Part shown: positions 5,405 through 40,548 of the stretch, in pieces
Layout: each line of letters starts with the position of its first letter
Numbering within the stretch: the first letter of the stretch is position 1
From: Guillardia theta CCMP2712
Lineage: Eukaryota; Protista; Cryptophyta
Direction of reading: 5' to 3'
Length of the DNA stretch: 64,000 nt
Assembly: GCF_000315625.1 (NCBI RefSeq)
Contig: NW_005434655.1
Span: 804,807 to 868,806 of the forward strand
The notes under the pieces: model-generated
Told to the model about the DNA's origin: nothing
The model's input: only the letters and a program-made list of their open reading frames with translations
The model's database searches: none
Made by a program: the position numbers and the translations under genes

Positions 5405-5579
5405 AGACCACGAAGTATATAAAAATATGGCAGAGGAGGGAGCAGAGCAGAAGCACGGCTGCCATAGGGGCCAGCCAAGTCGGGCCGAACTGCCAGGTCA
5501 CGAGACTAGAATGAGAGCAAGGTGATGAAGTAACAAGCCATGTAAACCTACCTAGCATTCTAATAAACTCAACAACTAC

Positions 5580-5636
5580 TAGGGTTTAGGGTTTAGGGTT
5601 TAGGCGCCGGGTAGGGTTTAGGGTTTGGGGTTTAGG
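5580..5636 (+). repeat. Interstitial telomeric repeats (TTTAGGG)n, partly degenerate
   Basis: TAGGGTTTAGGGTTTAGGGTTTAGG...TAGGGTTTAGGGTTTGGGGTTTAGG. Confidence 0.9.
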
Positions 5637-6700
5637 ACCAGGCCAGCAAGTCCACAAAGGCTTAGGTCAGAAAGGCTTCGTCGCTGTAGGGGCCAACGTC
5701 ATCTGGAGGCAGAGAGAGGTCGAGTGGATCATCTCCTCAAGTGGCCGCCCAGAGGCGAACGACGCGGGATTTCGAGCTTTCCGAGAGAGCGAAGCGATGG
5801 AGGGAGTACACCTGACTTTGTTCAGCGAGGACCCGAAGATCAGGGAGGCGCTCGCAGTCGAGTTGACAGCTGATCGATTCGTGTCCAGGAACAAGCTCAA
5901 GAAGGCATCGATGCAGAAGAAGAAGGCAGGCGGCATCTACCCGTGGACTGCCCGTGGACCCCTACCATCCCGAGAAAATGCCACTTTGAAGATAACCCCT
6001 ATTCTTCCCCCACCCACCATTCTTCTTCCCACAAATGAGGGTCCCCCAACCGGTCCTAAATTTGCACATTTGAAGCATCTGGCGAACTCAAATTGAAATT
6101 ATCAAAATACCCCCTATTACTATACTTTTGGAAGGGGTATCTCTCAGCTACCCTTCATTCAGATATTGAGAAGTTCGAAATTGATACCCCGATGAAAATA
6201 ATTGCAAAAGGTTTGAACCCCTACCCACCTCCAAGTACCCCTACCCCCTTGTTCAGACAGGCTCGATCTGCTGCCATGCCGGCAGCTCGCGGTTGCTGAG
6301 TGTTGCCCCTCCCCTCCCCTCCCCTCCCCTCCCTCCTGGACTCTTCTTCCTCTTCCTGGCCTCCTGTCGTCTACCGCTCTCGCCGCTCCTGTTCCTCTCG
6401 TCCTCTTGCACAAGGTGAGGCCGTTTGTCAGTTTAGTGAACCAGCGCTTTGCTCGGTCTGCTGCACCTGCTTTCTATAGCGCTTGTTGTCACTTTCTACC
6501 TGATCACAGCGTTGAAGAGCTGACCCTTGACACAAGGTCGTGCCCATTCTTCATTGAGGAAACGTATATCTCTCTCGTTGTGGAGAGATCAAGTGTTGCA
6601 TTGGGGGGTCTGTCTGTGGACGTATCTAGGCGATCTTCATGATAGCTTGAGGGGTACCTCGCACAGAACAAAGGAACACTTGAAACTACACGACTACAAG

Positions 6701-9700
6701 ATGGTATCGAGCCGCAGGAAAGACTTTGGGTGGATTGCTCGATACCTCTCTCGAAAATCCTCCTGGGTTTTGTTCAGCCAACCAGTCATCTTGATGGCTA
6801 TCTTCTGCTTGAGCTGCTCACTCAGAGTTGATAAGGTGGAGGCCGTGATAGCACCAGGGTCGAATGAGGGCTACTCCGGTTACAGCGGCGCATTTGGCTC
6901 GGGGTTGGAGCTGAAGACCGCATCCTCGAGTGCTAGGTTGCAGAGATCTCGGAGTGAGTCTGCGCTGGCCATGCTTGAACGGAAACTGTCCGGGTCCTCC
7001 ATGGGCCAGGCAGGTTCTGTTCCCGTTCCCGGAGAGCGAATCATGACCTTCAGTGAACTGTTTGCAAAACTTTCTCGCCCTGAGATGCTCGAGGGTGTGA
7101 GACCTGCATACATTAACTCCAACTCGGAGGCTCTGGACAGGAAGCAGCGGGAGAAGCTTGTTGTGATCTTGGTTGGTCTTCCTGCGAGAGGAAAGAGCTA
7201 CATTTCACATCGACTGGTAAATTACCTGAATTGGTATGGAATTCACTGCCGTCTGTTCAATGTTGGGGCATTTCGAAGGCAAAAGATGGCAGAAGATGCG
7301 ACCAAAGGCTCCCGCGCTGATTTCTTCAACAAGGACAACAGGGATGCAGCTCAGAAGCGAGAGGAACTAGCAGCTGAAGTTCTAGATCAACTTCTTGATT
7401 GGCTCGTCAACGGTGAGATCTTGACGTGGCGTCTGTTTCAGTCTGTGATGAGCTGATCAGGTGGAGGGAACCTTGCTATTTTCGATGCAACTAACACCAC
7501 GAGAGAACGAAGAAAGCGTGTGATTGAGCGCTGTCTCAAAGAGAAAGGGATACAGTGCATTTTTGTGGAGTCTATCTGCAATGATGCAAAGGTTGTTGAA
7601 GCCAATCTGGCAGAAAAGGTGACTCAGATTGACGCCCTTGTCTGTTTTTAAACTTTTCGTTGGAAGGTTCGACTCTCTCCTGATTTCAAGGGCATGGATT
7701 TCCACACCGCGATGAAGGACTTGAAAACAAGGATTGCGAATTATGAGGCAGTGTATGAAGAACTAGATGAAGCTGAAACTGACTCCACCGGGAAGAGCAT
7801 CAGCTTCATCAAGGTAATCCGATGGGCCTTCCTTGCGGATGCGATGTCAAGCTTTTGTTAGGTCATCAATCTCTCCTCCAAGGTCATTGCGAACAACGTG
7901 CACGGAGGCATCGCACGATCTGTGCTCACTTTCTTGATGAACCTCCACATTGTTCAAAGGCCCATATTTCTTGTACGTGCACCGAATGCAGATGGTCTCG
8001 AAGATCAAGAAACTACCTTTCCAGGCCTGCAGATGCCTGGAGGTATATGATGACAATATTATGCCTTTAGAAGAGGCTGACACTTTACTTTCTTTCAAGG
8101 TGTGTTGAAAGACATCTCAAAGCTGGATGGAAAAGAAGTTACTGAAGGAAGCGAGACTGACCTCCGAAACACGGGCAAGTACGATAGCCAAGTCGATCCT
8201 GTAAGGCGTAGAACTTCATACACGGATTTGTATGGAAGATATCAATCTTCCGAGATGAACACTCAGCCTATCGTCCAATTCGAGGATGAAAGATCGGCTG
8301 TTCTGGAACTGGCTGGTGAAGTGAATGTAGTCGTTGTGCGCAAAGGAGACAACACCTTGCCATGCTCGGTTCATTTTCAGACCGTGGATGGATCAGCAAA
8401 GGCAGGAATTCACTATGTTCATAATTCCGGAGTACTTAATTTTGCATCCTTGCAAAGCAGAGCTGAAATTAAGGTTCGATATGATCGAACTTGGGGACTT
8501 GTGGATTCTGACTTTCCTTCTTCCATTAGGTTATGATTATGGACTGCCAGAACTGCCATGAACCGGATGAAAATTTCTCTATTGTATTATCTGGAATCCA
8601 ACCTGCTGGTGTCAGTCTTGGGAGAAAGCAGCAATGCACTGTCACAATATTGAACGACGATGCAGGATTGCCAGAAAGACTTCGAATGGATTGGTCCAGG
8701 CTTCGATTCCCAGACTCGTCAAAATTGACAAGGGGACTCAATGATGGCGGCAGGGAGGTCGCAGATAGGCTGGGAGTTCTTCTTGAAGAGCAAGTCCAGG
8801 AGTTCTACATGAGGCAGCACAAACAAAAGTTGGAGAAGGTCAAAGTTGTACGAGATCTGTGCCAAGTCAAGCTGTTGGACATCCAAGAGGACATCAACAG
8901 CACCATTCATCGACGAGGTGTGGTGGAAGCAGCCATGCAGATCCAACACAGACTGGATGGAGAGGTAGTTGACTCGTCCAAGCGCGCGCTTCTGTTCTCT
9001 GAACCATATCACTCAGGGAAGCTTTGGAGGAGCCAAGATGCATCAAAACATCACCTCTACGATACGCTTGACTGGCCACCTGTACAACCGTCATCTTTTG
9101 GAGAAGGTGTTTCCCTAATTTTCTATTGTCGAGTTTGTGATCTTGGTCGATGAAGGCGCTTGATATCATCGAAGAAAAGCAAGGTCTTACTCGCAGTGTC
9201 GGGGAACCAGTAATGGGGGGTCACACGAATCGGCTATCGCAGATCACGTTAAAGGTTCTAGCTGCAGCTGTTGATGCGTGTTGATTGACTTGTTGATTTG
9301 AAGGTTCACTGCGTCCGAGCCAAGTCCGACATGAAAGAAATCATCAGCCGGATCAAGGAGATTTTCGAAGAAGATCGTTTGAAGTGAAATCCTTCCGAGT
9401 GACATTGGGTTCCCTCACTGGGTATGCAGACGGATAGAGGAAGGATGGGCAACAGAGGAATCTGAGATGGTGGAGGGAGTCGAAGTGAGTGTAGCTCTTC
9501 CCTTGTCATGTTGTTCGCTCACTAGAGGAACAAGGTCATCGAAGCTGCCAGGGACGTGGGGGAATTGGGGAAGCTGAAACAGGTGAACTTGGATCCTCTA
9601 CACTTGGTGGGACTGACAGGGAGACAGCGGCTGGATGAAAAGCAAGAAGCGTTGAAGGCCTGTGAGAAAGAGCTGGAGTGCGCCGAGGTAGCAGTGGGCT

Positions 9701-10853
9701 GCGATTGATTTTTCGAAGTTCATGCTGTTCCTCCTCGCAGAACACAGTCAAGGAGATGGAAGGGATGTCGGAAGAGCAGATACAAGAGTACTGCAGCAAG
9801 ACCTACGCGCCCCATGTGATTCTATGGCAATCTTGCGGGTCAGTCGCTGACTGGAGCCTGCCAGGTGTTCACGAGCACACTGCCGTTGGCTTCAGGAACT
9901 GGCAAGAGGCTCTTCCTTGAGGCAAGAACTGCCCCTTGTTGATGTCGCCGGGCTGACGTGCTACGCGTGCAGGAGGGTTACCATGAGGAGACGAGTGCGC
10001 TGAACATGGTGGACATCGGAGCTTGCCATGGCATGACCCTTGCCGAGCTCTATGACAGCATGTCAAAGGTGCCCTGCAGCCACTAGTGTTGTCCTCGGTA
10101 ACGCAAGTCCAGGACGCGATCAGGCAGTTCCTCGTCTCCCCTTACACGGCCAAGGTGCCGGGAGGAGAGTCGCTCAGGTCTGCTGGGCTCGTGCTGGAGG
10201 GTCTGACCGTCTGATCCTTGTGCATCTCGTCAGGGATGTTGTGAACAGGCTTGAGCCGTTTGTTGTCGATCGTATTGAGCGCCAGCGATCGCCTGTGGTT
10301 GTCGTTTCGCACCTGTCGACGCTGCAAGTCCTCTACCAATACTTCGTGGGAACAAGCTCGAAGACACCTTTTTGGAAGCTGCACATCCCGCATGGAAGGT
10401 AGACATGGAGGAAGCGGAGGGAGGTGGGAGGAGCAGGAGCAGGAGCAGGAGCAGGACGAAGAGGAGGTAGAGTTGTGGTGGAAGAGGATGAAGGGAGGAA
10501 GAGAAGGAGTGTCTAGGAATGGAAGGAGATTGTGACGGCAAGGTGATGACTGTTTGGGTCTTTTCAGTGTGATCCAGCTCGTGCCGCATCTCTTCGGCTT
10601 CGAGGAGAGGAGGTGAGAAGAGCAAAGGAGAGATCGAGGAAGGTATGACTCCCGTGCTATCAGATTCACGTTCCGATCGGAGGGGATGAAGAGGATAGAG
10701 AGCGACTCAGCGGTAAGCTGATAACTTGTGTTATTGCTCGTTCAATACTCACTTCCTCCTCCTCTCTTCCTCCTTGCCCCCTCCTCTGACTTCCTCCTCC
10801 ACCTCCACCTCTCCTTCCCTACAGGCTGTCCACATGTCGTCACATTGGGAGTG
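6701..10853 (+). CDS. 6-phosphofructo-2-kinase/fructose-2,6-bisphosphatase family protein with inserted Calx-beta domain (multi-exon)
   Basis: Kinase P-loop VGLPARGKSYIS, FNVGAFRR, AIFDATNTTRERR, FVESICND. Linker LMNLHIVQRPIFLV. Phosphatase-like parts VFTSTL, LNMVDIGACHGMT, PGGESLRDVVNRLEP, VVVSHLSTLQ. Calx-beta at ~8270-8660. Confidence 0.9.
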
Positions 10854-11169
10854 ACACCAAACTATTGTACAGTAATGCTTCTGTCTCTGTTAATTTTTCT
10901 TCACTTGAAAAGAATAACTCGATCTGTCTCCCTCTCCCTGCACTACAGCCCCTCCTTCCCGCTACACTTTTCCCTTCCGATGGTACATGCTCCCCTGCAT
11001 GTGCTCTTCTGGTACAAGATGGGCATCAAGTTGCAGACGAGGCAGAGGGACGAGGACGAGGATGGAAAGAGGAAGAGAACAAGGAGGGGGTCAACGAAGA
11101 GAAGGAGGACGACAACGAGGAGGAGGAAGAGGAGGAGTGGAACGAAGAGGAGGAGGAGGAGGAGGAGAA

Positions 11170-11804
11170 ACCTGGCACAGCCCAGTCGACATGCTGAGCA
11201 GAAAGTCGCTGGATGTACTCTTCCCTCCGCAGAACCTCCCACGTGCCCTCCTGGCCCTCCCCCTGCCCTCAGTGTGTCAGTGGAGCTCGGAGCAGCTTCA
11301 GCCTACGTGGAGGAGGAGGATGTGCGAGTGGTACTTGACGAGCGTGTCACGATGACCGACGGATACGAAGACGGAGCAGAGCGAAGGGAGGAGAGCGTAC
11401 AGCCTTGCCTCCGAGCTCGTGTCTAGCGCGCTGGTGGCTTCATCCAGGAACACCTGGAGGAGGAGGAGGAGGAGGAGGAGGAGGACGAGGACGAGGACGA
11501 GGAGGACAAGGAGGACAAGGAGGAGGACGAGGAGGACGAGGACAAGGAGGAGGAGGACGAGTCAGCGGAGAGATGACAAGGGAGACTGCAGAGAGGGTTG
11601 GTGGAGACCTGCTGGACTTTGCCGTAGTTGATAAGACGGGCAAAGGAGAGTCTTTGCTGCTCCCCGGGAGAAAGTCTTCGGCTCCAGTCAACCTCCTTGC
11701 TGCACGTGTCAGGAGGGAAAGAAGAGGGAGGAGGAGGAGATGCTGGTGGAAGGAGCGAAGAAGATCACTGAAGCAGAGGAGAGCGAAGGTGGGCAGAAGC
11801 AGGT

Positions 11805-11838
<34 letters not shown>

Positions 11839-13243
11839 AGGCGAGGAGGAGGAGGAGGAGGAGGAGGAGGAGGAGGAGGAGGAGGAGGAGGAGGAGGAGG
11901 AGCAGCAGCAGCAGCAGCAGAGCAGCAGCAGCAGCAGCAGCAGACGAGGAGGAGGACGAGGACGACGACGAGGAGGAGGAAACAAGCTGTAGCCGCAGCT
12001 GCAGCCGCAGCACTCATTCTCACCCGGACCGAGGTCTTGTCCATCGAGACGCCCCAGCCCCACCTCGTTGAGCAGCTGGAGCAGGCGAGCAGAGTCCGTG
12101 ACAGACCCGCAAACTCCGAGGTGGGGGTAGCAGATGCAGTCAGCGAGGCTGCCCATGGGCATGTAGACCTTCTGCGGGAGGAAGAAAACCGGATCCCCCA
12201 GCTGGACTGAGCCTGACCCTGACTCCCAAAGGCCGCAGAGGACGCGGAGGAGGGAGGTCTTGCCTGCTCCGGAGGGCCCCATGATCAGGAGGGACTCGCC
12301 GGCCTCCAGCGTGACCCGAAGATCCTGCACAAGCTTGCGGACGGTGCGGGGGACGCAGACTGACAAGCTGCGGATGACGAGGCCTTGGCCTTCAGCCTGC
12401 TGTGAAGGCGGAGGGGAGGAGGAAGAGGAGAAGGTCTGCATGCTGATCTCCCGCTCTCCTCGCTGAGACCTGTCGAGGAGGGCAGAGTCCGTGCTGCGAT
12501 TGACGTCCTCGAAGGTGAAGACCTGTTCGAGCTGCTTGCTCCCGACGATGGCGATCACGAGAGCTTCGAGGCGATCGAGCCCGGTGGCGAAGGAGGAGAA
12601 CTCGTCCGTCCTGTTGGCGATGACGAAGAGGGAGTAGCGAAGCATGAAGAATGCATCCTGCGCCTGCTTCACGACTCCAAACTCCACCTCTCCTGCAAGG
12701 TACTGCGGAGCCACAAGGACGGCCGGGAGGATCCCAGTGAGGTACTGGGTCGCGTTCTGGAACATCTCAAGTCCGAACATGCACCAAATGACGTTGCGGT
12801 TGTTGGCGATGAGAGCAGAGAGGAAAGAGCGAGAGGTCTGAAGCTCCCGCCCCCCCCCGTTGTACATGGCGATCGACTCAGCGTTCTCTCGCACCCGGAC
12901 GAGGTTGAAGCGGAGATCAGCCTCGCACTTGCGCTGGATGAAGTTAAGGACTGTGAGCCTCTTTCCGAAGAGCCAGGTGATGGCGCCGGTGATGAGAATG
13001 GAGTAGAGGATCGTGAAGACTGCAAGCTTGCCTGAGATGTTGTAGAGGATGGCGCCGAAGGAGAAGATCTGAAGGCCAGCGCCGAGAAAGACGACCATGA
13101 AGTTGAGAGAGGTTTTTGTGAACGACTCGATGTCACTGACGATACGCTGATCCGGGTTGTCGATGCTGTGTAGAACGTCCTCATCGTGGCTCCCCTCCGA
13201 TGACTGCAATGGTTCATGTCAGAGTTTGCGGGGAAGAAAGGGT

Positions 13244-28619: not shown

Positions 28620-29617
28620 NNNNNNNNNNNNNNNNNNNNNNNNNNNNNNNNNNNNNNNNNNNNNNNNNNNNNNNNNNNNNNNNNNNNNNNNNNNNNNNNN
28701 NNNNNNNNNNNNNNNNNNNNNNNNNNNNNNNNNNNNNNNNNNNNNNNNNNNNNNNNNNNNNNNNNNNNNNNNNNNNNNNNNNNNNNNNNNNNNNNNNNNN
28801 NNNNNNNNNNNNNNNNNNNNNNNNNNNNNNNNNNNNNNNNNNNNNNNNNNNNNNNNNNNNNNNNNNNNNNNNNNNNNNNNNNNNNNNNNNNNNNNNNNNN
28901 NNNNNNNNNNNNNNNNNNNNNNNNNNNNNNNNNNNNNNNNNNNNNNNNNNNNNNNNNNNNNNNNNNNNNNNNNNNNNNNNNNNNNNNNNNNNNNNNNNNN
29001 NNNNNNNNNNNNNNNNNNNNNNNNNNNNNNNNNNNNNNNNNNNNNNNNNNNNNNNNNNNNNNNNNNNNNNNNNNNNNNNNNNNNNNNNNNNNNNNNNNNN
29101 NNNNNNNNNNNNNNNNNNNNNNNNNNNNNNNNNNNNNNNNNNNNNNNNNNNNNNNNNNNNNNNNNNNNNNNNNNNNNNNNNNNNNNNNNNNNNNNNNNNN
29201 NNNNNNNNNNNNNNNNNNNNNNNNNNNNNNNNNNNNNNNNNNNNNNNNNNNNNNNNNNNNNNNNNNNNNNNNNNNNNNNNNNNNNNNNNNNNNNNNNNNN
29301 NNNNNNNNNNNNNNNNNNNNNNNNNNNNNNNNNNNNNNNNNNNNNNNNNNNNNNNNNNNNNNNNNNNNNNNNNNNNNNNNNNNNNNNNNNNNNNNNNNNN
29401 NNNNNNNNNNNNNNNNNNNNNNNNNNNNNNNNNNNNNNNNNNNNNNNNNNNNNNNNNNNNNNNNNNNNNNNNNNNNNNNNNNNNNNNNNNNNNNNNNNNN
29501 NNNNNNNNNNNNNNNNNNNNNNNNNNNNNNNNNNNNNNNNNNNNNNNNNNNNNNNNNNNNNNNNNNNNNNNNNNNNNNNNNNNNNNNNNNNNNNNNNNNN
29601 NNNNNNNNNNNNNNNNN
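28620..29617. other. Assembly gap (~1 kb of N); further ~100-N gaps at ~13.5, 15.1, 34.9, 52.4 and 56.2 kb
   Basis: Runs of N, each flanked by low-complexity sequence. Confidence 1.
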
Positions 29618-32600
29618 NTTTTACTCCTCGAACATATGATTCTGGAAGTCCGTCCCTGCCAACCAGCCCGTCAAGTCCTCCTGTCTTCTTCACCTCCTCC
29701 TCCCTCTCCTCCTCCCCCGCTTCCTTCCGCCCTCCCTCTCTCCTCCTCCCTCCTCTCCTCCCTCTCCTCCTCCCCCTCTCCTTCTCTTTGCCTTCCTTCC
29801 ACTCATCTTCCCCCTATCTGCTTTCCTTTCCCCTTCCTGCCCTTCTCCTCCCTCGCCTCTTCCTCCCACTCCTCCCGCTACTCTCAACCCGCTCTCCTCA
29901 CCGTCTATCTCGTCGTCTCCATAAAGATATTCCTTCACCAGCCAGTGGGGACGATGAGGCTGAAACATCCAGTGAGAAGGGAGGAGGAGGAGGCAGAAGG
30001 AGGAGGAGGAGGAGGAGGAGGAGGAAGGAGGCTGATCTATTGCATGATAGATGGGAAGCGAAAGAGATGATGTTGAGAAGGAACGACGGAGGAGAGAGAA
30101 GGGATGGATTGACGGCAGGGGGCTAAAAGAGGAGGAGAGAGGAGGGAGGAGGGAGGAGGGAGGAGGGAGGAGGGAGGAATCACTTTCTACCTGAACAACA
30201 TAATCGGTGACCAGAGACCTTGCGTACTCCTCCTCGTCGCTGCTGGAGTACCTGGAGGAGGTGGAAGGTAAGCAAGAGAGAGGGAGGGGGGAAGGACGGG
30301 AGGGAGGGAGGGAGGGAGGAAGGATGAGGGAGGGAGGGAGGGGCAGTTGCTCATACTTCGCCTTCCCATCTGAGAAAGAATCGTCGGGGATGTTACCCAA
30401 GTCAAGATCCTCGTCATCATCCACCAGCCCCAGCCGCAGCCTGTTCCTCTGCTTCCTCGACCTCCCCAGGTGCTGCGAGCCCGGCAGGTCCCGCACGTCG
30501 AAGGATGCGTCCCTGTGGTGATCTGGGCCCAGCAGCTGCTCGTGACCCTTCCATGCTCTCTTGCAGTACTTGTCATACAGCCTCTCCCCCGGACGATCCT
30601 TCTCCTTCCTCTCCTCCCTCTCCAGCACCCCGTAGCCGAAGAAGAGGTCGAGCTTCAGCGGAGGAGGAGGAGGAACGACCCCTTCGCTGACCTTCCACTG
30701 CTCAATCAGCTGGTCCTCCTTCACCCGCGTGATGGGGCTGAACGGAGAGCCGAATCTCTTTATCTTGTTCGCTATCCTCTGCTCGCACCCGAACGCCAGG
30801 TTGTGAAACAATCCCGACGCTACTTGTATCCTCCTTCCGAACATCCCTACGACTGGCACCGCCACCATGCAGTTCCCATGGTTCCCCTGCCCCGTCTGTC
30901 CCATGTCGCTGCTTCCCATCACTCGTACTTGCCCGTCAGTGGTGACCACCAGTGAGTGCTCCGACCCGCATGCGATGTCGACGGCGCGGTCGAGCACAGT
31001 CTCGTCCTCAAGACCCGCAACGAAGGCCAGCTCCTCGGGCAGGAGGTGGTCCGTCTCTGATCCCTCCGACCACCTCAGCCCCAGCTGCCCCAGCTGGTTC
31101 TTGCCGAACCCGAACAGGGTCCCGTTGGTGAGCAGGACGAGAGTGTGTTCGTCCCCGCATGCGATTTTTCTGATCTCGCAGCCGTCAAAGAAGCTGACCC
31201 TCGTCATCCTCCTCCTGTCCTCCTTGTCCCCTAGCCCCAACTGCCCGTTGCTGTTGCTCCCACACGCGTACAGTCTCCCTCCTTCCGTCGCAATCATGCA
31301 ATGCAGCGACCCGCACGCCACCACTGTCGCTCTCGCCGCGCCTCCTTGCTCCTCTGGCAGCTCGATCACTCGAGGTTCGCAGAACATATCATAACCCTCT
31401 TTACACCCGCCCGCCCCTTCCACCACCTGTATCCCCATCCCCAGCTGCCCCTTTCTGTCCCATCCCCATCCCACCACCTTCCCTCCCTCCAGGATCGCGA
31501 GCGAGAAGTCCCATCCCGCGGCGACGCACAGCACGTTCTCTCCGCTGAGCGCTGGCACCAAGCAGGGCGACCGATCGCTCATCCTTAAGTCCGTGCCTCC
31601 CCTGCCCAGCTGCCCGACCTCGTTGGCTCCAGCAGAGAAGAGCATCCCCCTCCCTGTCCCCTCCTCCTCCACCAGGAACAGCGTGTGGAAGAGCCCGACA
31701 GCGATCTGAAGGATGCTCGCCCCGTCCAACCCACGGACGCGGCAAGGAGCCGGCACGTCGTCGGGATCCACATCGCAGACACTCTTCATCTCCTGCACCA
31801 CCTCCTTCCACCTGCTCCCCAGCATTTCCCTCGCCTCCTCCTCGTTCAACTCGTCCAGGGGAGACTGTCCCGAGGCCTCGTGCCTCAGCCCCAGCCCCAG
31901 CTGCCCGAACTTGTTCGACCCGAACGCCAGCACGACGTTGGGATTGTGCAGGCAGACGAAACTCTGCATGCCTCCTGCGTAGATGGCAGAGATCCTGCCA
32001 TGAAAGGGAGTACCTGCTCTGAAAAGGGGATGTGAGATCGCAAAAGTCTGTTCAGCCTCATAGGGCAGTCCCAGCTGTTTGTCCAGGTTGCTTCCCCACA
32101 AGAGCAGCTGCTCCTGACACTCTCTCATCTCCTCTGCTGACTGTGGGTGATGAATGTTTCTCCGCACATACGCTGCGTTCCTCTTCCTTGCCAGGTATTC
32201 GATTTCAACCTGCCAACACACCCTGAGTGAGAGCAGGGCAGGAGGAGGGAGAGGAGAGGAGAGGAGAGGAGAGGAGAAGGGAGGGGAAGGGAAGATGGGA
32301 GGAGGGAAGGGGAGGGAAGGGGTGGGGAGGGGTGGAGGAGAACTCAGAGGACCAGGTGAGAAGACAAGGGTTGAGGGGCAGGAGGACAAGGAGGAGGTGG
32401 TCTGACCATCTCCAAGACAGGGGGGAGGGTGTCGGGGATGTAGGTCATGTCAACGACGTAACCGTAGTCAGGTCGCTTCTGTATGTAGCAAGGCATCTCC
32501 ACCGGCCCGTCGCCTACCCATGGATCGATTTCTGACTCCCCGTCCACGTAACGCTCCCTCGCTGCCTCCCTCCAGGGCTCCTCGACTCGCTTCTGGGTCT

Positions 32601-34137
32601 TGAAGTAGTCCATGTTCGGCATGTTCTGGTGCTTCAGATTCACTGGGATGTGGAAACCCTCGACCTCGATGCTCTTGTCCTTGCCTTGAATACTCTGAGA
32701 GATGTTGTACATGAACTCCTGCTCCTGTCTCGCCTCCTCCTCCCTCTCCAACTTCTTCGCATGGGCCATACTCACTGACCGCCGGTACTCACGGGACTCT
32801 TCGTCCGCCTCGTCATCCTCCGGGACTCTCTTGTCCAGCCCCGTCGATCGGATCAACTCCGGTATATGCCGTCTCTGCCACTCTGCCATCCTCGTGTCGT
32901 TGTACTTGAGGAACACTGAGCATCTGGACTCGACCATGTCGATCAGCTGCCTCGCCATCGTGTGCAGGACCCTCCAGTGTTTCGTCACTTGCGCAAAGGT
33001 TCGCAGCTGCTCGAGCTCTGGGGAATTGCTCTCATTGAACGAGTGCTCCTTCAGCAAGTTCTCCTTGCACATGAGCACCGGGTTCACTCGCTTGTACCGC
33101 TTCGGCAGCATCCTCCCATACTGATCGCGGTCCTCAAACCCTGCAGCAGAATCTTCCGAAGCGGGGAGGTCGAGGTCGTCGAGACAAGCTTGCAGTGGGT
33201 CATCTGTGCTCTCGTCCTCCTCCTTCCGCATCTGCGCTATCCTCTGCTTCAACGCTGCTTCCTCTGACCGACAGTTCTCACGCTTCGCCACCTCCATGCA
33301 AATCTTCCTCGCAGTCTCTCTTTGCGGCAGGTTCTCCCCGCCCACGTCCTCCAACAGCTCGAGGAAGACCTCTGCTCCTCTCCTCTTGACGTCAATCGTT
33401 CCTTGACTCCTCGCCGCATCCTCCTGCTCTTGAGCAAACTTGTCCGCCCCCGGCCCATGCCACTGGTCCAACGACACAAGATCCTCCGGCCGTCCAATCA
33501 GCCCAGGAATCTGTCGCACATCCTCCCCCCACTGCAGCGGTCGCACACCAGGGCCCCTCCTTTCGCTGGTCTGTAAGGAGTTGAAGAAGTCTGCATTCTC
33601 TTCCAAGATCAGCTGATCCTGCTCTTTGAGCCTTTTATCATAGATGGGGATCCGGATCGCGGGTGGACCTTTGGCAGGGTCGTCCTCGATGCTATCAACC
33701 TCATAGATCCCTCCAGGAGCGTACTTGGGCTCCTCCTCCTCCTCCTGCGCTAGGTTCTCGTCGCCAACCATGCTCCCCGTCCTCAATATCTGCTCGGAGA
33801 TGACCTGATGCAGTTCTGCCTCGGTATCCTCCACCATCTCCTTCTTGGTCTTGCGGTGCTTCTTCATCAGCGTCTTCTCACGGCTCATCCTTGCCTTCCT
33901 CTCCTCCTGCCCCTGAATCATCTTCATCTCCACCTGACTGCTGTACGACCCGAATGCCCTCGAACCACCTCGGATCCTTTGCAGCGGCGGAAGCGACGAG
34001 AGGAGAACTTTTGTGAAATCTCCTCTGCAGCTGTGAACCTTCTCCTCAACTGTCAAGGAATGTGCGATGGAGGAAGGATGAAAGCACATTTGTAGAAAGA
34101 GGAGGAGAAACAAGGTCAAGAATGTGGCAGGCTTCAT
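29618..34137 (-). CDS. RCC1-repeat protein with N-terminal signal peptide and long acidic N-terminal region (multi-exon; 3' end in gap)
   Basis: Repeats FGSNKFGQLGLG, AVGLFHTLFL, AGANEVGQLG, ACGSLHC, CGSNSNGQLGLG, IACGDEHT, FGKNQLGQLG, IACGSEHS. Exon 1 (34137 to ~32404) begins MKPATFLTLFLLLFLQMCF. Confidence 0.85.
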
Positions 34138-35630
34138 CGTTGCTTGCCCCTTGTGTGCTCTGTCATGCCTCCCGCACTCCCAACGTGCTACTCATCTCGT
34201 CCAGCCAAATCCCTGTGGGCTCTTCCATGAGAGAGTGATTTGTAATGCACGCTACTTTCTAATTGATGACATCTGGTACGCAACTGCTCCTCTCCAACAA
34301 CGTTTTCACTCCTCTACCGCAATCCCATTCTTCTTTGATTCCACCTGCAAACAGAACTTGGTTCAACAAGAGGAAGACAGATTACAGGCATGTGTCTCAG
34401 TTTCTCCATTCTGAACTTCCATCCCTTTCGGAACCCTGCTTCGCATCTCGTTCCGACCTCCTCCTCCTCCTCCTCTCTTCCACAACACAATTGATCCGGA
34501 TTCTACACCATTCGGTCGTTCCGTCTTCCCCTATCCGGGCTCCTTTGGTCCTCCCATTCTTTCGACTCCATTTCTAATGTTCACTCCCTATCTCTCCACC
34601 TTCGAAAACAATATTTATGATTAACTTTCGATTCATGTGCATCTGTCGACGACTTCCTCCCTCTTCCCTTGCTCCGTTCTACTCCAAACCTAAATCATTT
34701 CCTGATCTCCCGTCAAACTTTCTCTTCTTCTCCTCTCTACTTTTCTTCTCATAACCTCCTCCTCCTCCTCCACCACCACCACGAGGTGGTATTTTTCAAT
34801 ATTGGGGGGTTGGGGGGGGGGGGGGGGGGCTGGCTGCTTTACGGGGTTAGTGGGGGGGTGGGGGGGAGGTGGGGTGGGGTGGGGTGGGGGGGGGGGGGGT
34901 TTGGGGGGCGGCGAAACACAGAAAATACTAAAAAAGCAANNNNNNNNNNNNNNNNNNNNNNNNNNNNNNNNNNNNNNNNNNNNNNNNNNNNNNNNNNNNN
35001 NNNNNNNNNNNNNNNNNNNNNNNNNNNNNNNNNNNNNNNCATAATCAAAGGGGTACTAAATAGAGGATATCACAGACCAAATAGGGGTACTAGGAAATCT
35101 TAGCTGAGTGGGTAGGGGTACCGTTTAGTGCGATCATATGGGAAAGAAGGGAAGAAATGCAGGGATGGTTGTCAGGGAGGGAAAGGAAGGGAAGTGAAGA
35201 GGATGGGGAGGAATCGAGAGGAGGAAGAGGAGAGGATGGAAGCGTATGAAGAAGAAGAAGAGTAGCTGAGAAGGAGGGGAGCATGAGGATGAGGGGAGAG
35301 GAGAAGGGGAGGGAACGAAGGGAAGAATGAGGAAAGGTCGGAAGTGAAATGGAGACAAGAGGGAAGAGGAGAAGAGCGAAGAGGAGGATAACGAGGGATC
35401 TTACAATGGATAGGAGCAAAGATGAAACAAGAGCGAAGATCGTAATGAGCATTGAAAGAAAGCAAAGACAAGGAGGGTTGACGGTGAGAGTACAAGCATG
35501 ATCGCCGTCAGCAAACAAAGAAATCCTGGGAAAGACACATGTCTTGATCTCGAAGAATCACAAGAGTCACGGCACATTCTTTGTACCCAGAGTTGACATC
35601 CTATCGAAAGGGCAGATGGTGAGATAAAGA

Positions 35631-38435
35631 GTGGGACACGTCCTCGTTGATCTTTCACATGATCTGAAGGTATCTCCACTCCTTGATGTGCATGATCCTG
35701 ACTTTCACGTGAAGATGGTCGATGCAAACCAGCAGCTGGATGATGCTCATACAGAGGATAGGAGCAGCGGCCACGCAGATGCTGGAAATTCGATGGCGGC
35801 GGTTCCATTGAACGATCGGAGCAACATGGCCAATGGAAGGATTTATTCCTGGAAGCGATTTGTACCAGAGGTAGACGATATTCTTGAGCTGCGAAAGCAA
35901 AACGAGGATGAGAAGAGCGCATGGTCAGTAACGAGCGGATATCTTTTGTTCCTGCTGACGGATCACGCTCAGGTGTCATGCCAAAGTGCAGGAGGTGAAG
36001 AGGGACGAGGAGTCCAAGCGGGTCGAATGCCTGCTCAAGTACTTGAAAGATTGCTTCATTGAAGACAATCAAGTGGCAAAGGCCGGTGATGAAGAATGGG
36101 TGGAAATCAGCGACAAAGTATGCGACGCGAGCACCGACTTTGAAAACCCCAAGAGAACGGTAATGATGACCTGTGCGACTGGACGTGAAAGATGCATCTT
36201 CTACTGAAGTTTTAATTTCTGGCTTTCCCTGCAGATTTGGCCGAAGAATGGTCGATATTTCGTCAAACATGAGAACGAATCTCTCTTCTCAATTGGTAGA
36301 CTGTGTGATCTCAACTGTGGTCGAGAGCTCACGATCTGTAAACCAGGGAGGAAGTATGGGATTGCTTGGGAAGCTCTCGCTGCCTACAACGAGAATTTTC
36401 ATCCGACTCTGTCAAAACATTCAAGGATAAAGAGTGGGAGCGTGATTTATCTGCCTAAGGACAAAGTAAGTTTGTCTCAGGGATTGTTATCCGCAAAATC
36501 GCTATGCAAGTCCTCTCGTGACAGCTTGGTCCAGGAGCATGAAGGGCAAGCCAATGACGAGAATGCTGGAGTGGGTACCAGTCGGTCAGCAAGGAAGAGA
36601 CGTGTAGACAGGAATCTTTCGGACTTCTCACCTGCCAAAACTGAAAAGTCTCTCACGGAATCGTTTGAGGAATCCTTCGGTTCGCCGCAAGAAGACCGTG
36701 ATCTCACATCTGGCAGGCCTGCCAAGACTAGGAGGTCGTTGGTTTCGAGGAGCAGGAGTATTGAGAGAAAATATCACGAATGCTTGTTGCTGCGCGACAA
36801 GCCAGAAAATTGCGTTTCATCGTATTGCGTCAACTTTAGACAAACTGCGAGGAGAGGATTGCTGGAAGAGATTTTGCCGACGGACCATGATGTCGATCTG
36901 TACCACAACATGGAGAAGAAGACGACGGAAAAGGCGTCGAAAGATGCCGATGCGCTCCTTCAATACTCAGCCAATGGACTCAGCAAGATCTCGAGAGGGT
37001 TGGTTGGCTTGTGCAGCGTGCTCCCTCCCTGATTGCTCTTTGCAGAACTTTGAATCACATGTCTCCGGAGTCAAGCATCCTCTACAAGATGGTGAAGAAC
37101 AAACGGTAACCCACCTCTGCTGTCTCATCTCTCCATCATCTCCCTGGTCAGGTCGTTGGACCAGAGGATCTACTGGCGGGATTATCGTGAGAAGGAGACC
37201 ACCGGCGAAGAGGGTGCTTCGCCCGTTTCACACCAGGAGCCGCGGGCTGTAGAGGAGGCAGACTCAGGGTCTTACAGGTCTGCCTTGAGAATCTTTGGTG
37301 GTCGGCTGGAGCTCAATGCCCCGATGCTCTGCAGGGAGATCGAGGAGTCCAACGCGAGCACCTCTGGATGGAGTTCATTCGTCCCTTCCCATCCCAACTT
37401 TGCCAACACCTTCTCCATGATCGATTGTAGCAAGAGGCTGCTGACTGATGCGCTCAAGGTAACGGGCCCGCTTGCTTGCCTGCTGGTCTGACTTGCCCTG
37501 ACACTCAAGGCTTGCGGGAGGCCGCGCACTGAGGTGGAGCGGCAAGTGCAGCTGAACTTGGCAACAGACTATCTTGAGGTTATCTTCGGGATGCAGGGGC
37601 AGGCCTTCCGGTCGGTGCTGGAGACGATCTCCAAGAGCATGTCGGAGGTTGACAACAAGATTCAGAACCTGCGCGAGCTGCATGCGCAGCGCACTGGGAG
37701 CAAGGAAGAGTTCAACAACAGCGCATTCCTGCCCTTTCATTCCATGCAGTCGACTGCACCCAAGAGTTCTGACCGGAGAGACATCAAGAACAACGAGATG
37801 CTGAGCGAGTTCGAGGCCGCGTATGGGTGCGAGCGGCCAGCAGCTGAAGCGAGCAGGAGGAAGCTCACGGCTGGGAGCTCGCAGGCGCAGGAAAGGAGGA
37901 GGTTAGAGACACCGATTGAGATGACGAGGAAGAAGAAGACGATACAGGGGGTGGCATACAAGGACACGTCGAATGGAGGAAAGAGCGAGAAGAGCGTAAG
38001 GCAGGGTCAGCAAGAACTTCACGTCGACAAGGAGCGGGGAGTCCAAGAGCCCGCAAAGAGTCTGAATGTTGAGGTGACTCCGCCCAACGAGCCACATCCC
38101 GCAGCAGCTCCCAAGCCACCCATGACTGAAGACAAGACCCTTGACTCCTTCCAGGAATTCTTTGGAGGAGATCCCGACGACACAGAGGAGGAGGAGGAAG
38201 ACGACGAGGAAGAGGAAGGGGAAAAGGATCGATTGCCTTCTCGAGGGGGAGAGGATACGCGCGCAAGCAGAGGCAGCAACGTGGTGAGCGACATGAAGGA
38301 GAGGGGGTCATGCTCATCGTTGGGGCAGGTGGGTCAGTCGGGTGGGTCAACACCAACAAGGGTGAAGAAGATGGCATTTGTTGTCAAGGTGAGATGCGAT
38401 GTGTGTTGGAGAATGCAATGACATGTTCAGCAGTG
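35631..38435 (+). CDS. Hypothetical protein (multi-exon)
   Basis: Chain of open frames separated by ~50-nt GT-AG introns. Charged low-complexity C-terminus. No family recognised. Confidence 0.55.
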
Positions 38436-38735
38436 AGGGAGACAAGCAGAGAAAGTTCTTTACTGTCAATGATGAACGCAAACTAGGTCCAATTTCCAAA
38501 CACACTCATTTGTGGAAGGTAGATGGCATAACATGTTATAATGTACATAACCAGCAAGACATGTGTGTTGTTGTCTCTCGTGCACCTTTATTCGAGAAAA
38601 GAATCTATGAGATACAGATTGTAAGAGAAGATCATCAAGCCAGCTTAACCAAAGGAAAATCTAAAAATGCAAAAGAATTGTCTCTTGCCCGAGGGAGTCA
38701 AAAAACCGCTAAAGTCCTTGTCGCAAATCTTGTCG

Positions 38736-39667: not shown

Positions 39668-40548
39668 TGACCCCCGAGTGCACTGCACAACGTGTCAGAC
39701 ACGGACAACGTGATTGACAATCCTCCATCATGAGTGATGCTTCTCAAACATGAAGAAAGTTCAACATCTCTAACTCTCTTCCAGTATTCTAAGGAGTGAA
39801 TCATTTACGACCAATACAGGTTGTTGGCAATTTCCGCTAGTCACCACAAGTACGATGAAGGTATACGCTTCATATCGTTACAATGTAACAACACCACATT
39901 ACATCGTGAGACATCGTGAGAAAGTATCCATAAATGTTGCAAGGCAAACTTCCCTCACAAAACTCTCCCATTCCAACTCTGGAAGAATCCATCAACTCTC
40001 TAGGTACAATACAGACTTGGCACGATGCGAGCAAGATGCAAGCGTCCTTGTCAGGGAAACACAATTGGTTCAGCTTTCTCCAAGATCCTCAAACATTGAA
40101 ATAACCTCCACTTTGAACCTCGATCTCATTCTTGCTTCTACAGCTCAGATCCATCTCAATTCGAACCTATCCCTGACTACACAATCTACCCTCTTCCATC
40201 TTACACTGGATCACCCTCTGGCATTACATTCAACTTTTTCTCTCTCTCATTTTTTGCTTCATTTCTCGCCATCTCTCCATCCTCTCTCTCTCCTCTCCCT
40301 TCCCATCGCGCTCTGCCCTCAGTCCCTCCATCCCTCGCTTGTTCTATTTCTGGGGTGAGTTTTAATCACCCCTACCCCAGAATTCCACCACCCCACCTCC
40401 TAGTCGACATTTTTTTCACCCACCCTTACCTTTGACAGAATTATGCCATATTATCGTACCCCTCTTTGAGACAAAAAACCCACCCTCACCCCATATTCTT
40501 TTTGGTTTGGGACCTCCCAGGGGCACTGCTAGAGGATATTCGGAATCA

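What the first reader, a model, noticed from the sequence alone, without database searches (positions are those of the whole stretch)
7950..10400. PFK-2 with an apparently dead bisphosphatase that hosts an inserted Calx-beta (Ca2+-binding) domain
Seen: where histidine phosphatases have RHG (IYLxRHGES) this gene has PIFLVRAPN. The second catalytic Arg motif (TSxLxRAxxT) reads TSTLPLASGT. Shortly after the lost RHG come ~100 aa of Calx-beta (IVQFED..VLELAGEVNVVVVRKG..SVHFQTVDGSAKAGIHY..SGVLNF..EIKV..EPDENFSIVLS..CTVTILNDD), and the phosphatase fold then resumes. The kinase P-loop is intact. Established: Calx-beta binds Ca2+ in Na/Ca exchangers, and Fru-2,6-P2 controls glycolysis and gluconeogenesis. 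Inference: a kinase-only enzyme in which a pseudo-phosphatase scaffold carries a Ca2+ sensor, directly coupling Ca2+ to carbon flux.
Basis: partly seen in the sequence, partly recalled or inferred. Interest (0 to 1): 0.85.

Follow-up and report, generated by a model that had tools for sequence, protein, structure and literature searches.

The report
Kinase-only PFK-2 with nested sensor domains
A cryptophyte alga (most likely Guillardia theta) makes a fructose-6-phosphate 2-kinase whose attached phosphatase half is catalytically dead but strongly conserved, and which carries two domains inserted into it: a Calx-beta domain of the calcium-sensor type and a small LOR/SDH-N domain. This is an undescribed way of wiring signals into the glycolysis regulator fructose-2,6-bisphosphate.

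Summary
Spliced transcript contigs from three studies, and a database protein identical to my 20-exon model (P0151, 975 aa), show one mRNA. It encodes 6PF2K (239 bits), Calx-beta (59.5 bits, full length) and His_Phos_1 (48.8 bits).

The kinase keeps every near-invariant family residue. The phosphatase has lost the nucleophilic His (RHG to RAP), Arg307 (to Leu) and Glu327 (to Met). Its whole fold is still predicted: 187 of 190 residues of rat FBPase-2, Z 21.7.

- a second insertion of about 240 aa (long helix, Saccharop_dh_N/ACT-like domain, return coil);
- a signal-peptide-like N-terminus;
- conserved basophilic Ser sites.

The architecture is conserved at 40-60% identity in Hanusia, Cryptomonas paramaecium and unnamed transcriptomes and metagenomes. 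These form one clade nested inside a wider dead-RHG PFK-2 clade. G. theta also has two intact RHG paralogues.

Calcium sensing is untested. Guillardia keeps 7 of 9 NCX1-CBD1 ligand side chains, but Asp447 is Cys and Asp498 is Asn. Across orthologues only two ligand positions are invariant.

Verdict: a genuine new variant of monofunctional PFK-2. The Ca2+ coupling is plausible (about 25-30%) but not shown. I found no earlier scan notes or papers on it.

The parts
6288..6414 (+). 5' non-coding exon. Its end at 6414 is defined; its start is only bracketed by the depth bin. The intron 6415-6536 follows.
   Evidence: transcript contigs carry 36-104 nt upstream of the piece that starts near 6531, and there is depth in bin 6288-6484; donor aag|gtgagg at 6414/6415 and acceptor acaag|gtc at 6536/6537.
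6701..10854 (+). Coding region of the PFK-2 gene, 20 coding exons. The likely start is ATG 6701 (MVSSRRK...). The database protein P0151 starts at 6794. The stop is TGA 10852-10854. Exon ends and starts: 7412/7461, 7618/7667, 7813/7862, 8042/8100, 8473/8530, 8964/9017, 9106/9156, 9254/9304, 9383/9430, 9484/9535, 9582/9628, 9687/9741, 9815/9865, 9921/9973, 10068/10113, 10177/10234, 10398/10568, 10612/10664, 10712/10825.
   Evidence: The first 15 junctions are listed in spliced contigs of three runs. The rest follow from the exact identity of the model to P0151.
6701..7135 (+). N-terminal leader. It has a basic n-region and a hydrophobic stretch (WVLFSQPVILMAIFCLSCSL) that looks like a signal peptide or anchor. 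A Ser/Gly-rich stretch and the conserved RLQRSRSESA motif (RSRSES at 6944-6961) follow.
   Evidence: The hydrophobic segment and RSRSES motif are conserved in P0176 and in the in-frame sequence upstream of P0177.
7136..7951 (+). 6-phosphofructo-2-kinase domain (P0151 115-338), with the P-loop GLPARGKS at 7175-7198.
   Evidence: Pfam 238.8 bits. E 2.7e-50 to human PFKFB3. All 90%-conserved kinase columns of a 46-sequence alignment are retained.
7967..7987 (+). Strand beta1 of the His-phosphatase fold with the degenerate catalytic motif FLVRAPN (canonical YLxRHGE). The nucleophilic His is replaced by Ala.
   Evidence: R-[AV]-P occurs in all nine family members that cover the site.
7994..8257 (+). 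Predicted disordered linker (P0151 353-421) carrying the basic-Ser motif VRRRTS (RRRTS at 8204-8218).
   Evidence: pLDDT 30-39. Only 28-32% identity to orthologues. The Ser is invariant and at least two preceding basic residues are kept in all seven covering sequences: RRRTS, KRRSS, GKRIS, RRRNS.
8258..8661 (+). Calx-beta domain (P0151 422-537), split by the intron 8474-8529. It is inserted in the loop after the former RHG.
   Evidence: Pfam 59.5 bits over profile positions 3-119 of 119. PDB sequence hits to CALX and NCX1 CBD1 at E 3e-12. Foldseek hit to 2dpk at E 1.4e-9, target TM 0.73-0.83.
8662..8745 (+). Junction AGLPERLRMDWSRLRFPDSSKLTRGLNDGG, leading into phosphatase helix alpha1. It is the most densely invariant stretch of the C-terminal half.
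   Evidence: Invariant columns L540 P541 R545 W548 S549 L551 R552 F553 D555 G567. 71-75% identity to P0176 and P0177.
8743..8961 (+). One long predicted helix (P0151 565-637). It begins as phosphatase helix alpha1 and continues as the outgoing limb of a stalk, the start of insertion 2.
   Evidence: AF2 helix H565-637, pLDDT 91-96.
9044..9439 (+). Saccharop_dh_N (LOR/SDH N-terminal, beta-alpha-beta-beta-alpha-beta, ACT-like) domain, P0151 648-731, spanning 4 exons.
   Evidence: Pfam PF04455: 24.6 bits in the whole protein and 28.5 bits in the excised piece, against a cut-off of 23.5. The same family scores 33.2 bits in orthologue P0006 and 26.3 bits in P0176. Foldseek hits to 3mgj (target TM 0.70, rmsd 2.1) and to AgrE and ArgZ, E about 1.4e-3 to 5e-3.
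9440..9809 (+). Return limb of the stalk (P0151 732-805): one strand plus helices 754-789 and 793-803.
   Evidence: AF2 secondary structure, pLDDT 94-97 for the main helix. Weak coiled-coil-type Pfam hits.
9810..10679 (+). Remainder of the His-phosphatase fold (P0151 806-955). TSTLPLA at 9871-9891 has Arg307 replaced by Leu. NMVDIG at 10003-10020 has Glu327 replaced by Met. VSHLSTLQ at 10304-10327 keeps the second His.
   Evidence: Pfam His_Phos_1 48.8 bits, profile positions 46-182. PFKFB3 E 3.6e-13. 1fbt Z 21.7, 187 of 190 residues, model range 341-955. 77-80% identity to orthologues.
9922..9972 (+). The only non-GT intron of the gene (GC-AG).
   Evidence: The joint 9919/9971 has 3 ambiguous bases. 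Only the shift of +2 gives a GC..AG boundary and keeps the frame.

Best explanation
The gene encodes a monofunctional, kinase-only 6-phosphofructo-2-kinase found in cryptophytes.

Shown:
- The N-terminal kinase domain is fully intact, so the enzyme should make fructose-2,6-bisphosphate.
- The C-terminal His-phosphatase domain has lost its nucleophile and most substrate-binding residues, yet it is as conserved as the kinase.
- Its complete fold is predicted in the canonical position relative to the kinase.
- Two modules are nested into its loops.
  - A CBD1-like Calx-beta domain sits in the loop after the former RHG, the old active-site lid. A disordered linker with a conserved basic-Ser motif precedes it. 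An invariant Arg/Trp-rich junction ties it to helix alpha1.
  - A Saccharop_dh_N (ACT-like) domain sits on a two-helix stalk between alpha1 and beta2.

Inferred:
- The dead domain is a pseudo-enzyme kept as an allosteric and regulatory platform.
- Inputs arrive through the two nested modules and through phosphorylation of the RSRSES and RRR[TN]S sites, and they tune kinase output.
- Degradation of Fru-2,6-P2 is left to the two paralogues that keep an intact RHG.
- For the Calx-beta module I consider a rigid, conserved docking or lever element the likelier family-wide role.
- Ca2+ binding at a reduced site remains possible in the Guillardia/Hanusia lineage.
For: Single mRNA and exon chain.

Domains.

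Kinase intact:
- E 2.7e-50 to PFKFB3.
- All columns conserved at 90% or more are retained: G128-K134, F155, N156, G158, R161, R162, R189, D215-N218, R223, R224, E243, S244, C246, N255, D265, R281, Y285, Y289, K308.

Phosphatase dead in every family member.

Fold complete and in canonical arrangement:
- Full-length AF2 model, pLDDT 76.6, pTM 0.68.
- 2bif: Z 29.6, rmsd 2.1 A over 399 of 432 residues.
- 1fbt: Z 21.7 over 187 of 190 residues, model range 341-955.

Purifying selection on the dead domain. Identity to P0176 and P0177:
- His_Phos remainder: 77-80%
- kinase: 74%
- junction: 71-75%
- linker: 28-32%

One origin: the Calx-bearing proteins form a clade with 100/99 support, nested in a dead-RHG clade with 99/96 support.

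Same architecture elsewhere:
- P0176 and P0177, as uninterrupted ORFs on transcript-like contigs.
- Cryptomonas paramaecium P0217.
- Metagenomic scaffolds L014-L016, where the next exon encodes the Saccharop_dh_N-like and His_Phos parts.

Intact RHG paralogues in the same genome: IYLTRHGQSE on C14 and IYLTRHGESN on C41.
Against: - No activity data exist. 'Kinase-only' and 'regulatory platform' are inferred from residues and conservation.
- The interdomain geometry of the nested modules could not be inspected, because only confidence values and fold matches are returned.
- The Saccharop_dh_N assignment is only just above the Pfam cut-off in the window protein.
- The signal-peptide-like N-terminus raises the possibility that the protein works in a compartment (ER-derived or periplastidial) where its role could differ from cytosolic Fru-2,6-P2 signalling.
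- Arg257 and His392 are retained, so residual ligand binding in the old pocket cannot be excluded.
Confidence: 0.7

Rival explanations
1. The nested Calx-beta domain is a true Ca2+ sensor working like NCX1 CBD1. Ca2+ fills acidic sites at its C-terminal end and rigidifies the junction to the pseudo-phosphatase. This switches kinase activity and couples cytosolic Ca2+ directly to Fru-2,6-P2.
For: - The best PDB sequence matches are the Ca2+-binding CBD1 domains of CALX and NCX1 (E 3e-12 to 8e-10).
- The best fold match is 2dpk, 'primary Ca2+ sensor' (E 1.4e-9).
- The window protein keeps the equivalents of E385, D421, D446, E451, E454, D499 and D500.
- In NCX1, D499 and D500 at the C-terminal end both bind Ca3/Ca4 and are clamped by an Arg of the next domain (PMC3386913).
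- Here ND(D/E) is followed directly by an invariant Arg-rich junction.
Against: - D447, a ligand of both Ca3 and Ca4, is Cys. D498 is Asn.
- The EF-loop acidic cluster is not conserved, even within the Guillardia-like branch: Hanusia has E451 to Ala, P0176 has Ser and Leu, and P0177 has Val and Val.
- The Cryptomonas-like branch has Gln at E385, Leu at E454, and Gln or His at D500, plus a long low-complexity EF-loop insert.
- Only the D421 and D499 equivalents are invariant.
- Calx-beta domains that do not bind Ca2+ in this way exist, for example integrin beta4 (a fold hit; its non-binding is from my own knowledge).
Confidence: 0.25
2. The Calx-beta domain is a Ca2+-independent structural or protein-docking module. 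It would act as a rigid beta-sandwich spacer that occupies the old active-site lid, or that recruits a partner or substrate complex. Regulation would come instead from phosphorylation of the flanking linker and from the Saccharop_dh_N module.
For: - Conservation is concentrated in the last strand and the junction (invariant L513 ... D555), not in the Ca2+-ligand loops.
- The basic-Ser motif lies in the disordered linker just upstream.
- The wider dead-RHG clade tolerates unrelated inserts of 48-276 aa at the same place, which marks it as a permissive surface loop.
Against: - Guillardia, Hanusia, P0176 and P0177 keep an acidic residue at the equivalents of E385, D421, D453, E454, D499 and D500. 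That would not be expected if the site were irrelevant.
- No partner is known.
Confidence: 0.4
3. The C-terminal domain is still a working phosphatase that uses the retained His906 and Arg347. It would be a bifunctional enzyme, or a phosphatase for another substrate.
For: Arg257 and His392 equivalents are retained in all members, and the domain is highly conserved.
Against: - The phospho-acceptor His is Ala or Val in all nine members covering the site.
- The Gly of RHG is Pro.
- Arg307 is Leu or Ile, Glu327 is Met, Gln393 is Leu and Arg397 is Gln.
- The H256A mutation of rat testis enzyme is the form the window motif aligns to (2bif).
Confidence: 0.03
4. Artefact. The Calx-beta exons would belong to another transcript, an alternative isoform or a mis-assembly.
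For: None found. Raw-read RNA run X19 had almost no coverage of the gene, so per-read support is lacking.
Against: - Identical spliced contigs occur in three runs from three studies.
- A database protein is identical to the model.
- Orthologues encode the same chain as single ORFs.
- Skipping exons 5 and 6 would shift the frame.
Confidence: 0.01

Closest known systems
Animal bifunctional PFK-2/FBPase-2 (PFKFB1-4; PDB 1bif, 2bif, 2axn, 1k6m)
   Same: Same two-domain core in the same relative arrangement (Z 29.6, rmsd 2.1 A, 399 residues, 34% identity). Same kinase motifs. Basic-Ser motifs flank the core, as in the liver and heart isoforms (their role here is inferred).
   Different: - The phosphatase nucleophile and most substrate ligands are lost.
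- About 460 residues separate the RHG site from TSTL, against 42-46 in canonical enzymes.
- Those residues hold two extra domains.
- There is a signal-peptide-like leader.
Dead-RHG PFK-2 clade of diverse eukaryotes (P0218-P0236, including Planoprotostelium fungivorum and the G. theta paralogue on contig C87). From my own knowledge, the monofunctional yeast Pfk26/Pfk27 and some trypanosomatid isoenzymes are similar.
   Same: Shares LVR[A/P/T/S/C]G in place of RHG, N[M/P]xD in place of NEID, and the VSH[L/A]STLQ signature. Shares a variable insert at the same loop. The window protein is nested in this clade with 99/96 support.
   Different: - Their inserts of 48-276 aa carry no Pfam domain, and they keep Arg307 (TSTLPRA).
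- Only the cryptophyte subclade has Calx-beta plus Saccharop_dh_N and has also lost Arg307.
CBD1 Ca2+-sensor domains of NCX1 and Drosophila CALX (PDB 2dpk, 3ead, 3rb5, 3us9)
   Same: Closest solved relatives of the nested domain in sequence (32-36% identity, E 3e-12) and in modelled fold (target TM 0.73-0.83). Seven of nine ligand side chains are kept. The acidic C-terminal end leads straight into the next structural unit.
   Different: - Here there is a single domain nested inside an enzyme fold, not a tandem CBD1-CBD2 in a transporter loop.
- D447 is Cys and D498 is Asn.
- The ligand set is not conserved among orthologues.
Saccharop_dh_N (PF04455) domains of MJ1480 (3mgj) and of cyanobacterial ArgZ/AgrE (6juy, 6lrf)
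   Same: Same small alpha/beta fold (target TM 0.70, rmsd 2.1 A, 73 residues). Pfam score above the cut-off.
   Different: - In those proteins the domain is part of amino-acid-metabolising enzymes. Here it sits on a helical stalk inside a pseudo-phosphatase.
- No function is established for the domain in either context.

Membership tests
6-phosphofructo-2-kinase (Pfam PF01591) | Profile match above the curated cut-off over the whole domain | tested here: met
   238.8 bits against a cut-off of 27, profile positions 7-221 of 223. E 2.7e-50 to PFKFB3.
6-phosphofructo-2-kinase (Pfam PF01591) | Walker A GLPARGK[ST], the FDATNTT.ERR motif, and the conserved Arg/Tyr residues of the Fru-6-P site | tested here: met
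   All columns conserved at 90% or more in a 46-sequence alignment are retained. The motifs are identical across the family. The assignment of roles to these residues is from established PFKFB structures, from my own knowledge.
6-phosphofructo-2-kinase (Pfam PF01591) | Catalytic activity: ATP + Fru-6-P to Fru-2,6-P2 | not testable with these tools
   Needs an enzyme assay.
Histidine phosphatase superfamily branch 1 / FBPase-2 domain | Fold | tested here: met
   His_Phos_1 48.8 bits against a cut-off of 21.7. 1fbt Z 21.7, 187 of 190 residues aligned, model range 341-955.
Histidine phosphatase superfamily branch 1 / FBPase-2 domain | Catalytic RHG histidine, second Arg, Glu proton donor and second His | tested here: not met
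   RHG is RAP, Arg307 is Leu and Glu327 is Met. Only Arg257 and His392 are retained. The domain is therefore a pseudo-enzyme member of the fold, not a functional FBPase-2.
Calx-beta (Pfam PF03160) | Profile match and beta-sandwich fold | tested here: met
   59.5 bits against a cut-off of 27, profile positions 3-119 of 119. Foldseek E 1.4e-9 to 2dpk, target TM up to 0.83 to CALX CBD1.
Ca2+-binding CBD1-type Calx-beta | Complete set of acidic Ca2+ ligands (E385, D421, D446, D447, E451, E454, D498, D499, D500), conserved in relatives | tested here: inconclusive
   Seven of nine are kept in the window protein, with D447 as Cys and D498 as Asn. Only the D421 and D499 equivalents are invariant among orthologues.
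Ca2+-binding CBD1-type Calx-beta | Measured Ca2+ binding | not testable with these tools
   Needs ITC, 45Ca binding or a structure with ions.
Saccharop_dh_N (Pfam PF04455) | Profile match above the cut-off and matching fold | tested here: met
   Against a cut-off of 23.5 bits, the window protein scores 24.6 (28.5 for the excised piece), P0006 scores 33.2 and P0176 scores 26.3. P0177 scores 21.3, below the cut-off. Foldseek hits to 3mgj, AgrE and ArgZ at E about 1.4e-3 to 5e-3, target TM 0.70. The match is marginal but consistent.

The most novel reading that the evidence does not exclude
The catalytically dead phosphatase domain has been turned into a two-input receiver. A Ca2+-binding Calx-beta module and a small-molecule-binding ACT-like (Saccharop_dh_N) module, both nested in its loops, would directly gate synthesis of fructose-2,6-bisphosphate. 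Given the conserved signal-peptide-like leader, this could even happen in the periplastidial or ER-derived compartment of a secondary-plastid alga. That would be a direct second-messenger-to-glycolysis switch with no known counterpart.
Probability: 0.2. Interest if true: 0.8.

Novelty: new variant of a known kind. Interest (0 to 1): 0.6.

Why it matters
**Regulation of Fru-2,6-P2.** Fructose-2,6-bisphosphate is the master allosteric regulator of the glycolysis/gluconeogenesis switch in eukaryotes. All well-studied PFK-2 enzymes are regulated through their termini, by phosphorylation. This family shows a different solution: a dead catalytic domain under strong purifying selection that hosts two nested putative sensor domains.

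**A ready test.** It offers a clean experimental test of whether a Calx-beta domain can act as a Ca2+ switch outside membrane exchangers.

**Pseudo-enzymes.** It is a clear example of a pseudo-enzyme reused as a regulatory scaffold.

**Cryptophyte carbon metabolism.** It gives an entry point into carbon-flux control in cryptophytes, whose starch metabolism lies in the periplastidial compartment (from my own knowledge).

**Limits.** The interest is limited by the narrow taxonomic range and by the incomplete, poorly conserved Ca2+-ligand set.

Tried and rejected
- **Pfam on single exons.** It found 6PF2K and half of Calx-beta. His_Phos_1 fell just below the cut-off and Saccharop_dh_N was missed. 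The full-length database protein was needed.
- **First AF2 job on the C-terminal 646 residues with a 15-row alignment.** It was poor (pLDDT 57.7) and did not assemble the phosphatase core. It was used only for the Calx-beta and Saccharop_dh_N fold matches. The 46-row full-length job replaced it.
- **ESM Atlas feature search.** No usable hit.
- **Literature searches.** Searches for PFK-2 with Calx-beta, with cryptophyte or with Guillardia, and for the SRA run numbers of the orthologues, found nothing relevant. I cannot cite a description, and the species of P0176, P0177 and the metagenomic branch remain unnamed. The tree places P0180 and P0012 with Cryptomonas paramaecium.
- **Raw-read RNA run X19.** It gave almost no coverage of the gene, so transcript ends, strand and expression level could not be read.
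- **Rfam scan of the very deeply covered stretch 5500-5893.** Nothing found.
- **Saccharop_dh_N six-frame search of the genome.** Nothing found, not even the window copy, because the domain is split over four short exons. That blank is therefore meaningless.
- **Earlier scan notes.** None bear on this gene.
- **Complex prediction.** Not used, because no protein-protein binding claim is made.

Full report
**What is in the sequence**

The region is a eukaryotic gene on the + strand with very short introns. Three-frame translation and a manual exon chain gave a 20-exon model. Its introns are 44-57 nt, with two longer ones (169 and 112 nt) at the 3' end. One intron is GC-AG (9922-9972).

Laying public runs on window 5500-11400 showed intron-less contigs in three runs from three studies (X1, X2, X8). 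They join the exons at exactly the predicted GT-AG positions, with 15 junctions listed. Such contigs can only come from spliced RNA. The kinase exons and the Calx-beta exons lie on the same contig.

A representative search with exon 6, followed by a cluster look-up, produced P0151. This is a 975-aa protein called on a 5.5-kb contig. Its last 892 residues are identical to my model.

Skipping the Calx-beta exons (374 + 435 nt) would shift the frame.

**Organism**

- The window's assembly is 87.1 Mb in 669 contigs.
- The nearest named protein, 94% identical, is from Hanusia phi.
- Another family member is from Cryptomonas paramaecium.
- I infer that the genome is Guillardia theta. This is an inference from assembly size and relatives, not a label given by a tool.

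**Domains**

Pfam on P0151 gives:

| Family | Residues | Bits | Note |
|---|---|---|---|
| 6PF2K | 115-338 | 238.8 | |
| Calx-beta | 422-537 | 59.5 | whole profile |
| Saccharop_dh_N | 652-721 | 24.6 | cut-off 23.5; 28.5 when excised |
| His_Phos_1 | 806-942 | 48.8 | profile positions 46-182 only |

Saccharop_dh_N also scores 33.2 bits in orthologue P0006 and 26.3 bits in P0176.

The first 45 His_Phos_1 profile positions (strand beta1 with RHG, the loop, and helix alpha1) are separated from the rest by two insertions:
- Insertion 1 is a disordered linker of about 70 aa plus the Calx-beta domain. It sits in the loop after the former RHG.
It follows helix alpha1 and consists of a very long helix, the Saccharop_dh_N-like alpha/beta domain, and a return helix.

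**Kinase intact, phosphatase dead**

The kinase domain aligns to human PFKFB3 at E 2.7e-50. It retains every column that is at least 90% conserved in a 46-sequence alignment, including the P-loop, FNVGxxRR, FDATN..RR, ESIC and R..Y...Y.

In the phosphatase, alignments to solved PFKFB structures and to the 46-sequence set show the following:
- IYLCRHGE becomes IFLVRAPN. The window motif aligns best to the H256A mutant 2bif.
- LKRT becomes LPLA, so Arg307 is lost.
- NEIDAG becomes NMVDIG, so Glu327 is lost.
- ICHQAVMR becomes VSHLSTLQ. The second His is kept, but Gln393 and Arg397 are lost.

The same substitutions occur in all family members that cover the sites.

**The fold is nevertheless complete**

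A full-length AF2 model with a 46-row alignment reached pLDDT 76.6 and pTM 0.68. Structural alignment gave:
- Z 29.6, rmsd 2.1 A over 399 of 432 residues of the rat testis bifunctional enzyme.
- Z 21.7 over 187 of 190 residues of the isolated rat liver bisphosphatase domain, spanning model residues 341-955.

The split segments therefore reassemble a full His-phosphatase fold in the canonical position relative to the kinase. The two insertions are excursions from it.

From the earlier partial model:
- The Calx-beta part matches NCX1 CBD1 (2dpk, E 1.4e-9) and CALX CBD1 (target TM 0.80-0.83).
- The second module matches the Saccharop_dh_N domain of MJ1480 (3mgj, target TM 0.70) and the same domain in AgrE and ArgZ.

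**Conservation and evolution**

Full-length or partial orthologues with the same architecture exist at 40-60% identity:
- P0176 (1051 aa)
- P0177 (948 aa)
- P0217 (Cryptomonas paramaecium)
- P0180, P0012 and P0009 (metagenomic)
- P0006

In the metagenomic scaffolds a 526-aa exon (kinase, dead RHG, Calx-beta) is followed after about 110 nt by an exon encoding the Saccharop_dh_N-like and His_Phos parts.

Identity by region, against P0176 and P0177:

| Region | Identity |
|---|---|
| Kinase | 74% |
| beta1 / dead RHG | 83-92% |
| Linker | 28-32% |
| Calx-beta | 59-64% |
| Junction | 71-75% |
| Saccharop_dh_N | 63-68% |
| Remaining His_Phos | 77-80% |

The dead domain is thus at least as constrained as the live one.

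A maximum-likelihood tree of the kinase domain shows:
- All Calx-bearing proteins fall in one clade (100/99 support).
- That clade is nested in a larger clade (99/96) of PFK-2s with a degenerate RHG.
- Canonical RHG enzymes are separate.

The wider dead-RHG clade includes Planoprotostelium and many protist sequences. Its inserts of 48-276 aa at the same place carry no Pfam domain.

The G. theta genome holds four relatives:
- this gene;
- a dead-RHG paralogue without Calx-beta on contig C87;
- two paralogues with an intact IYLTRHG motif, on C14 and C41.

Degradation of Fru-2,6-P2 therefore does not depend on this gene.

**Is the Calx-beta a Ca2+ sensor?**

Using the ligand list in PMC3386913 and the alignment to NCX1 and CALX, the ligand equivalents in P0151 are:

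| NCX1 CBD1 | P0151 |
|---|---|
| E385 | E438 |
| D421 | D465 |
| D446 | D498 |
| D447 | C499 |
| I449 | C502 |
| E451 | E504 |
| E454 | E507 |
| D498 | N535 |
| D499 | D536 |
| D500 | D537 |

Seven of nine side-chain ligands are kept. However, D447, which serves both primary sites Ca3 and Ca4, is lost.

Across orthologues only D465 and D536 are invariant:
- The EF-loop acids vary even between Guillardia and Hanusia.
- The Cryptomonas-like branch has Gln or Leu at several ligand positions and a long low-complexity loop insert.

The most invariant feature is the last strand together with the junction GLPERLRxDWSRLRFPD. It is appealing to compare this junction with the Arg-clamped CBD1-CBD2 junction of NCX1, but that comparison is inference.

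I put Ca2+ gating of the kinase at about 25%. A Ca2+-independent lever or docking role is somewhat more likely for the family as a whole.

**Other regulatory features (inferred)**

- A basic-Ser motif (RRR[TN]S in most members) lies in the disordered linker.
- A conserved RLQRSRSES motif lies ahead of the kinase domain.
- Both look like basophilic-kinase sites, analogous to the terminal sites of PFKFB1 and PFKFB2.

The likely start codon is ATG 6701. It is preceded only by a 3-codon upstream ORF and gives a basic n-region followed by a hydrophobic stretch. The same feature is present in P0176 and in the in-frame sequence upstream of the called start of P0177. This conserved signal-peptide or anchor-like leader leaves the compartment open.

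**Novelty and verdict**

Monofunctional PFK-2s with degenerate phosphatase domains are known, so the dead phosphatase alone is ordinary. The following appear new:
- a CBD1-like Calx-beta domain and a Saccharop_dh_N domain nested inside that pseudo-phosphatase;
- their conservation as one clade in cryptophytes;
- strong constraint on the dead fold.

I found no paper that mentions the combination.

The Ca2+ coupling remains a testable hypothesis with mixed sequence support.

Noticed in passing
window 6701-6860; L009:520-700; L010:230-360: The protein and its orthologues begin with a basic n-region and a hydrophobic stretch of about 20 aa, like a signal peptide or signal anchor. A Ser/Gly-rich stretch follows. 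In a cryptophyte this could mean ER or periplastidial targeting of a PFK-2.
   Followed up: partly
window 5500-5893: Contig word-depth in runs X1 and X2 is enormous here (about 29,000-48,000 and 11,800, against 15-400 over the PFK-2 gene). Several loose ends occur. No convincing ORF and no Rfam match were found. It may be an abundant unannotated RNA, or a repeat shared with other loci.
   Followed up: partly
window 9922-9972: One GC-AG intron among 20 otherwise GT-AG introns. Most introns are strikingly uniform in length: 16 of the 19 inside the coding region are 44-57 nt.
   Followed up: yes
window 10819-11400: Transcript contig X1 (5,515 nt) runs on past the PFK-2 stop. Raw reads of X19 lie on the opposite strand here. 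This suggests overlapping 3' ends with the convergent minus-strand gene at 11440-13209, an ABC-transporter-like ORF with long low-complexity Ser/Pro/Leu runs.
   Followed up: no
G000:C87:102000-105100 (L006:4400-7100, minus strand): A paralogue of the dead-RHG type (WLVRPGP, YIFTSTLPR, VISHLSTLQ). About 850 nt separate the RHG site from TSTLP, and no Calx-beta was detected. It resembles the P0218/P0223 type.
   Followed up: partly
G000:C14:947200-948850 (L007) and G000:C41:126100-127900 (L008): Two canonical PFK-2/FBPase-2 paralogues with intact IYLTRHG(Q/E)S motifs. The genome therefore keeps bifunctional enzymes alongside the kinase-only ones.
   Followed up: partly
window 10399-10567 and 10713-10824: The two long 3' introns are built largely of GGAGCA/GAGGAG and CCTCCT microsatellite-like repeats. 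The same repeats fill the intergenic DNA up to 11500.
   Followed up: no
alignment, P0218-P0236: In the wider dead-RHG PFK-2 clade, the loop between the RHG site and TSTL is a hot spot for lineage-specific inserts (48-276 aa, against 42-46 aa in active enzymes). None has a Pfam assignment. Other nested regulatory modules may be hidden there.
   Followed up: partly
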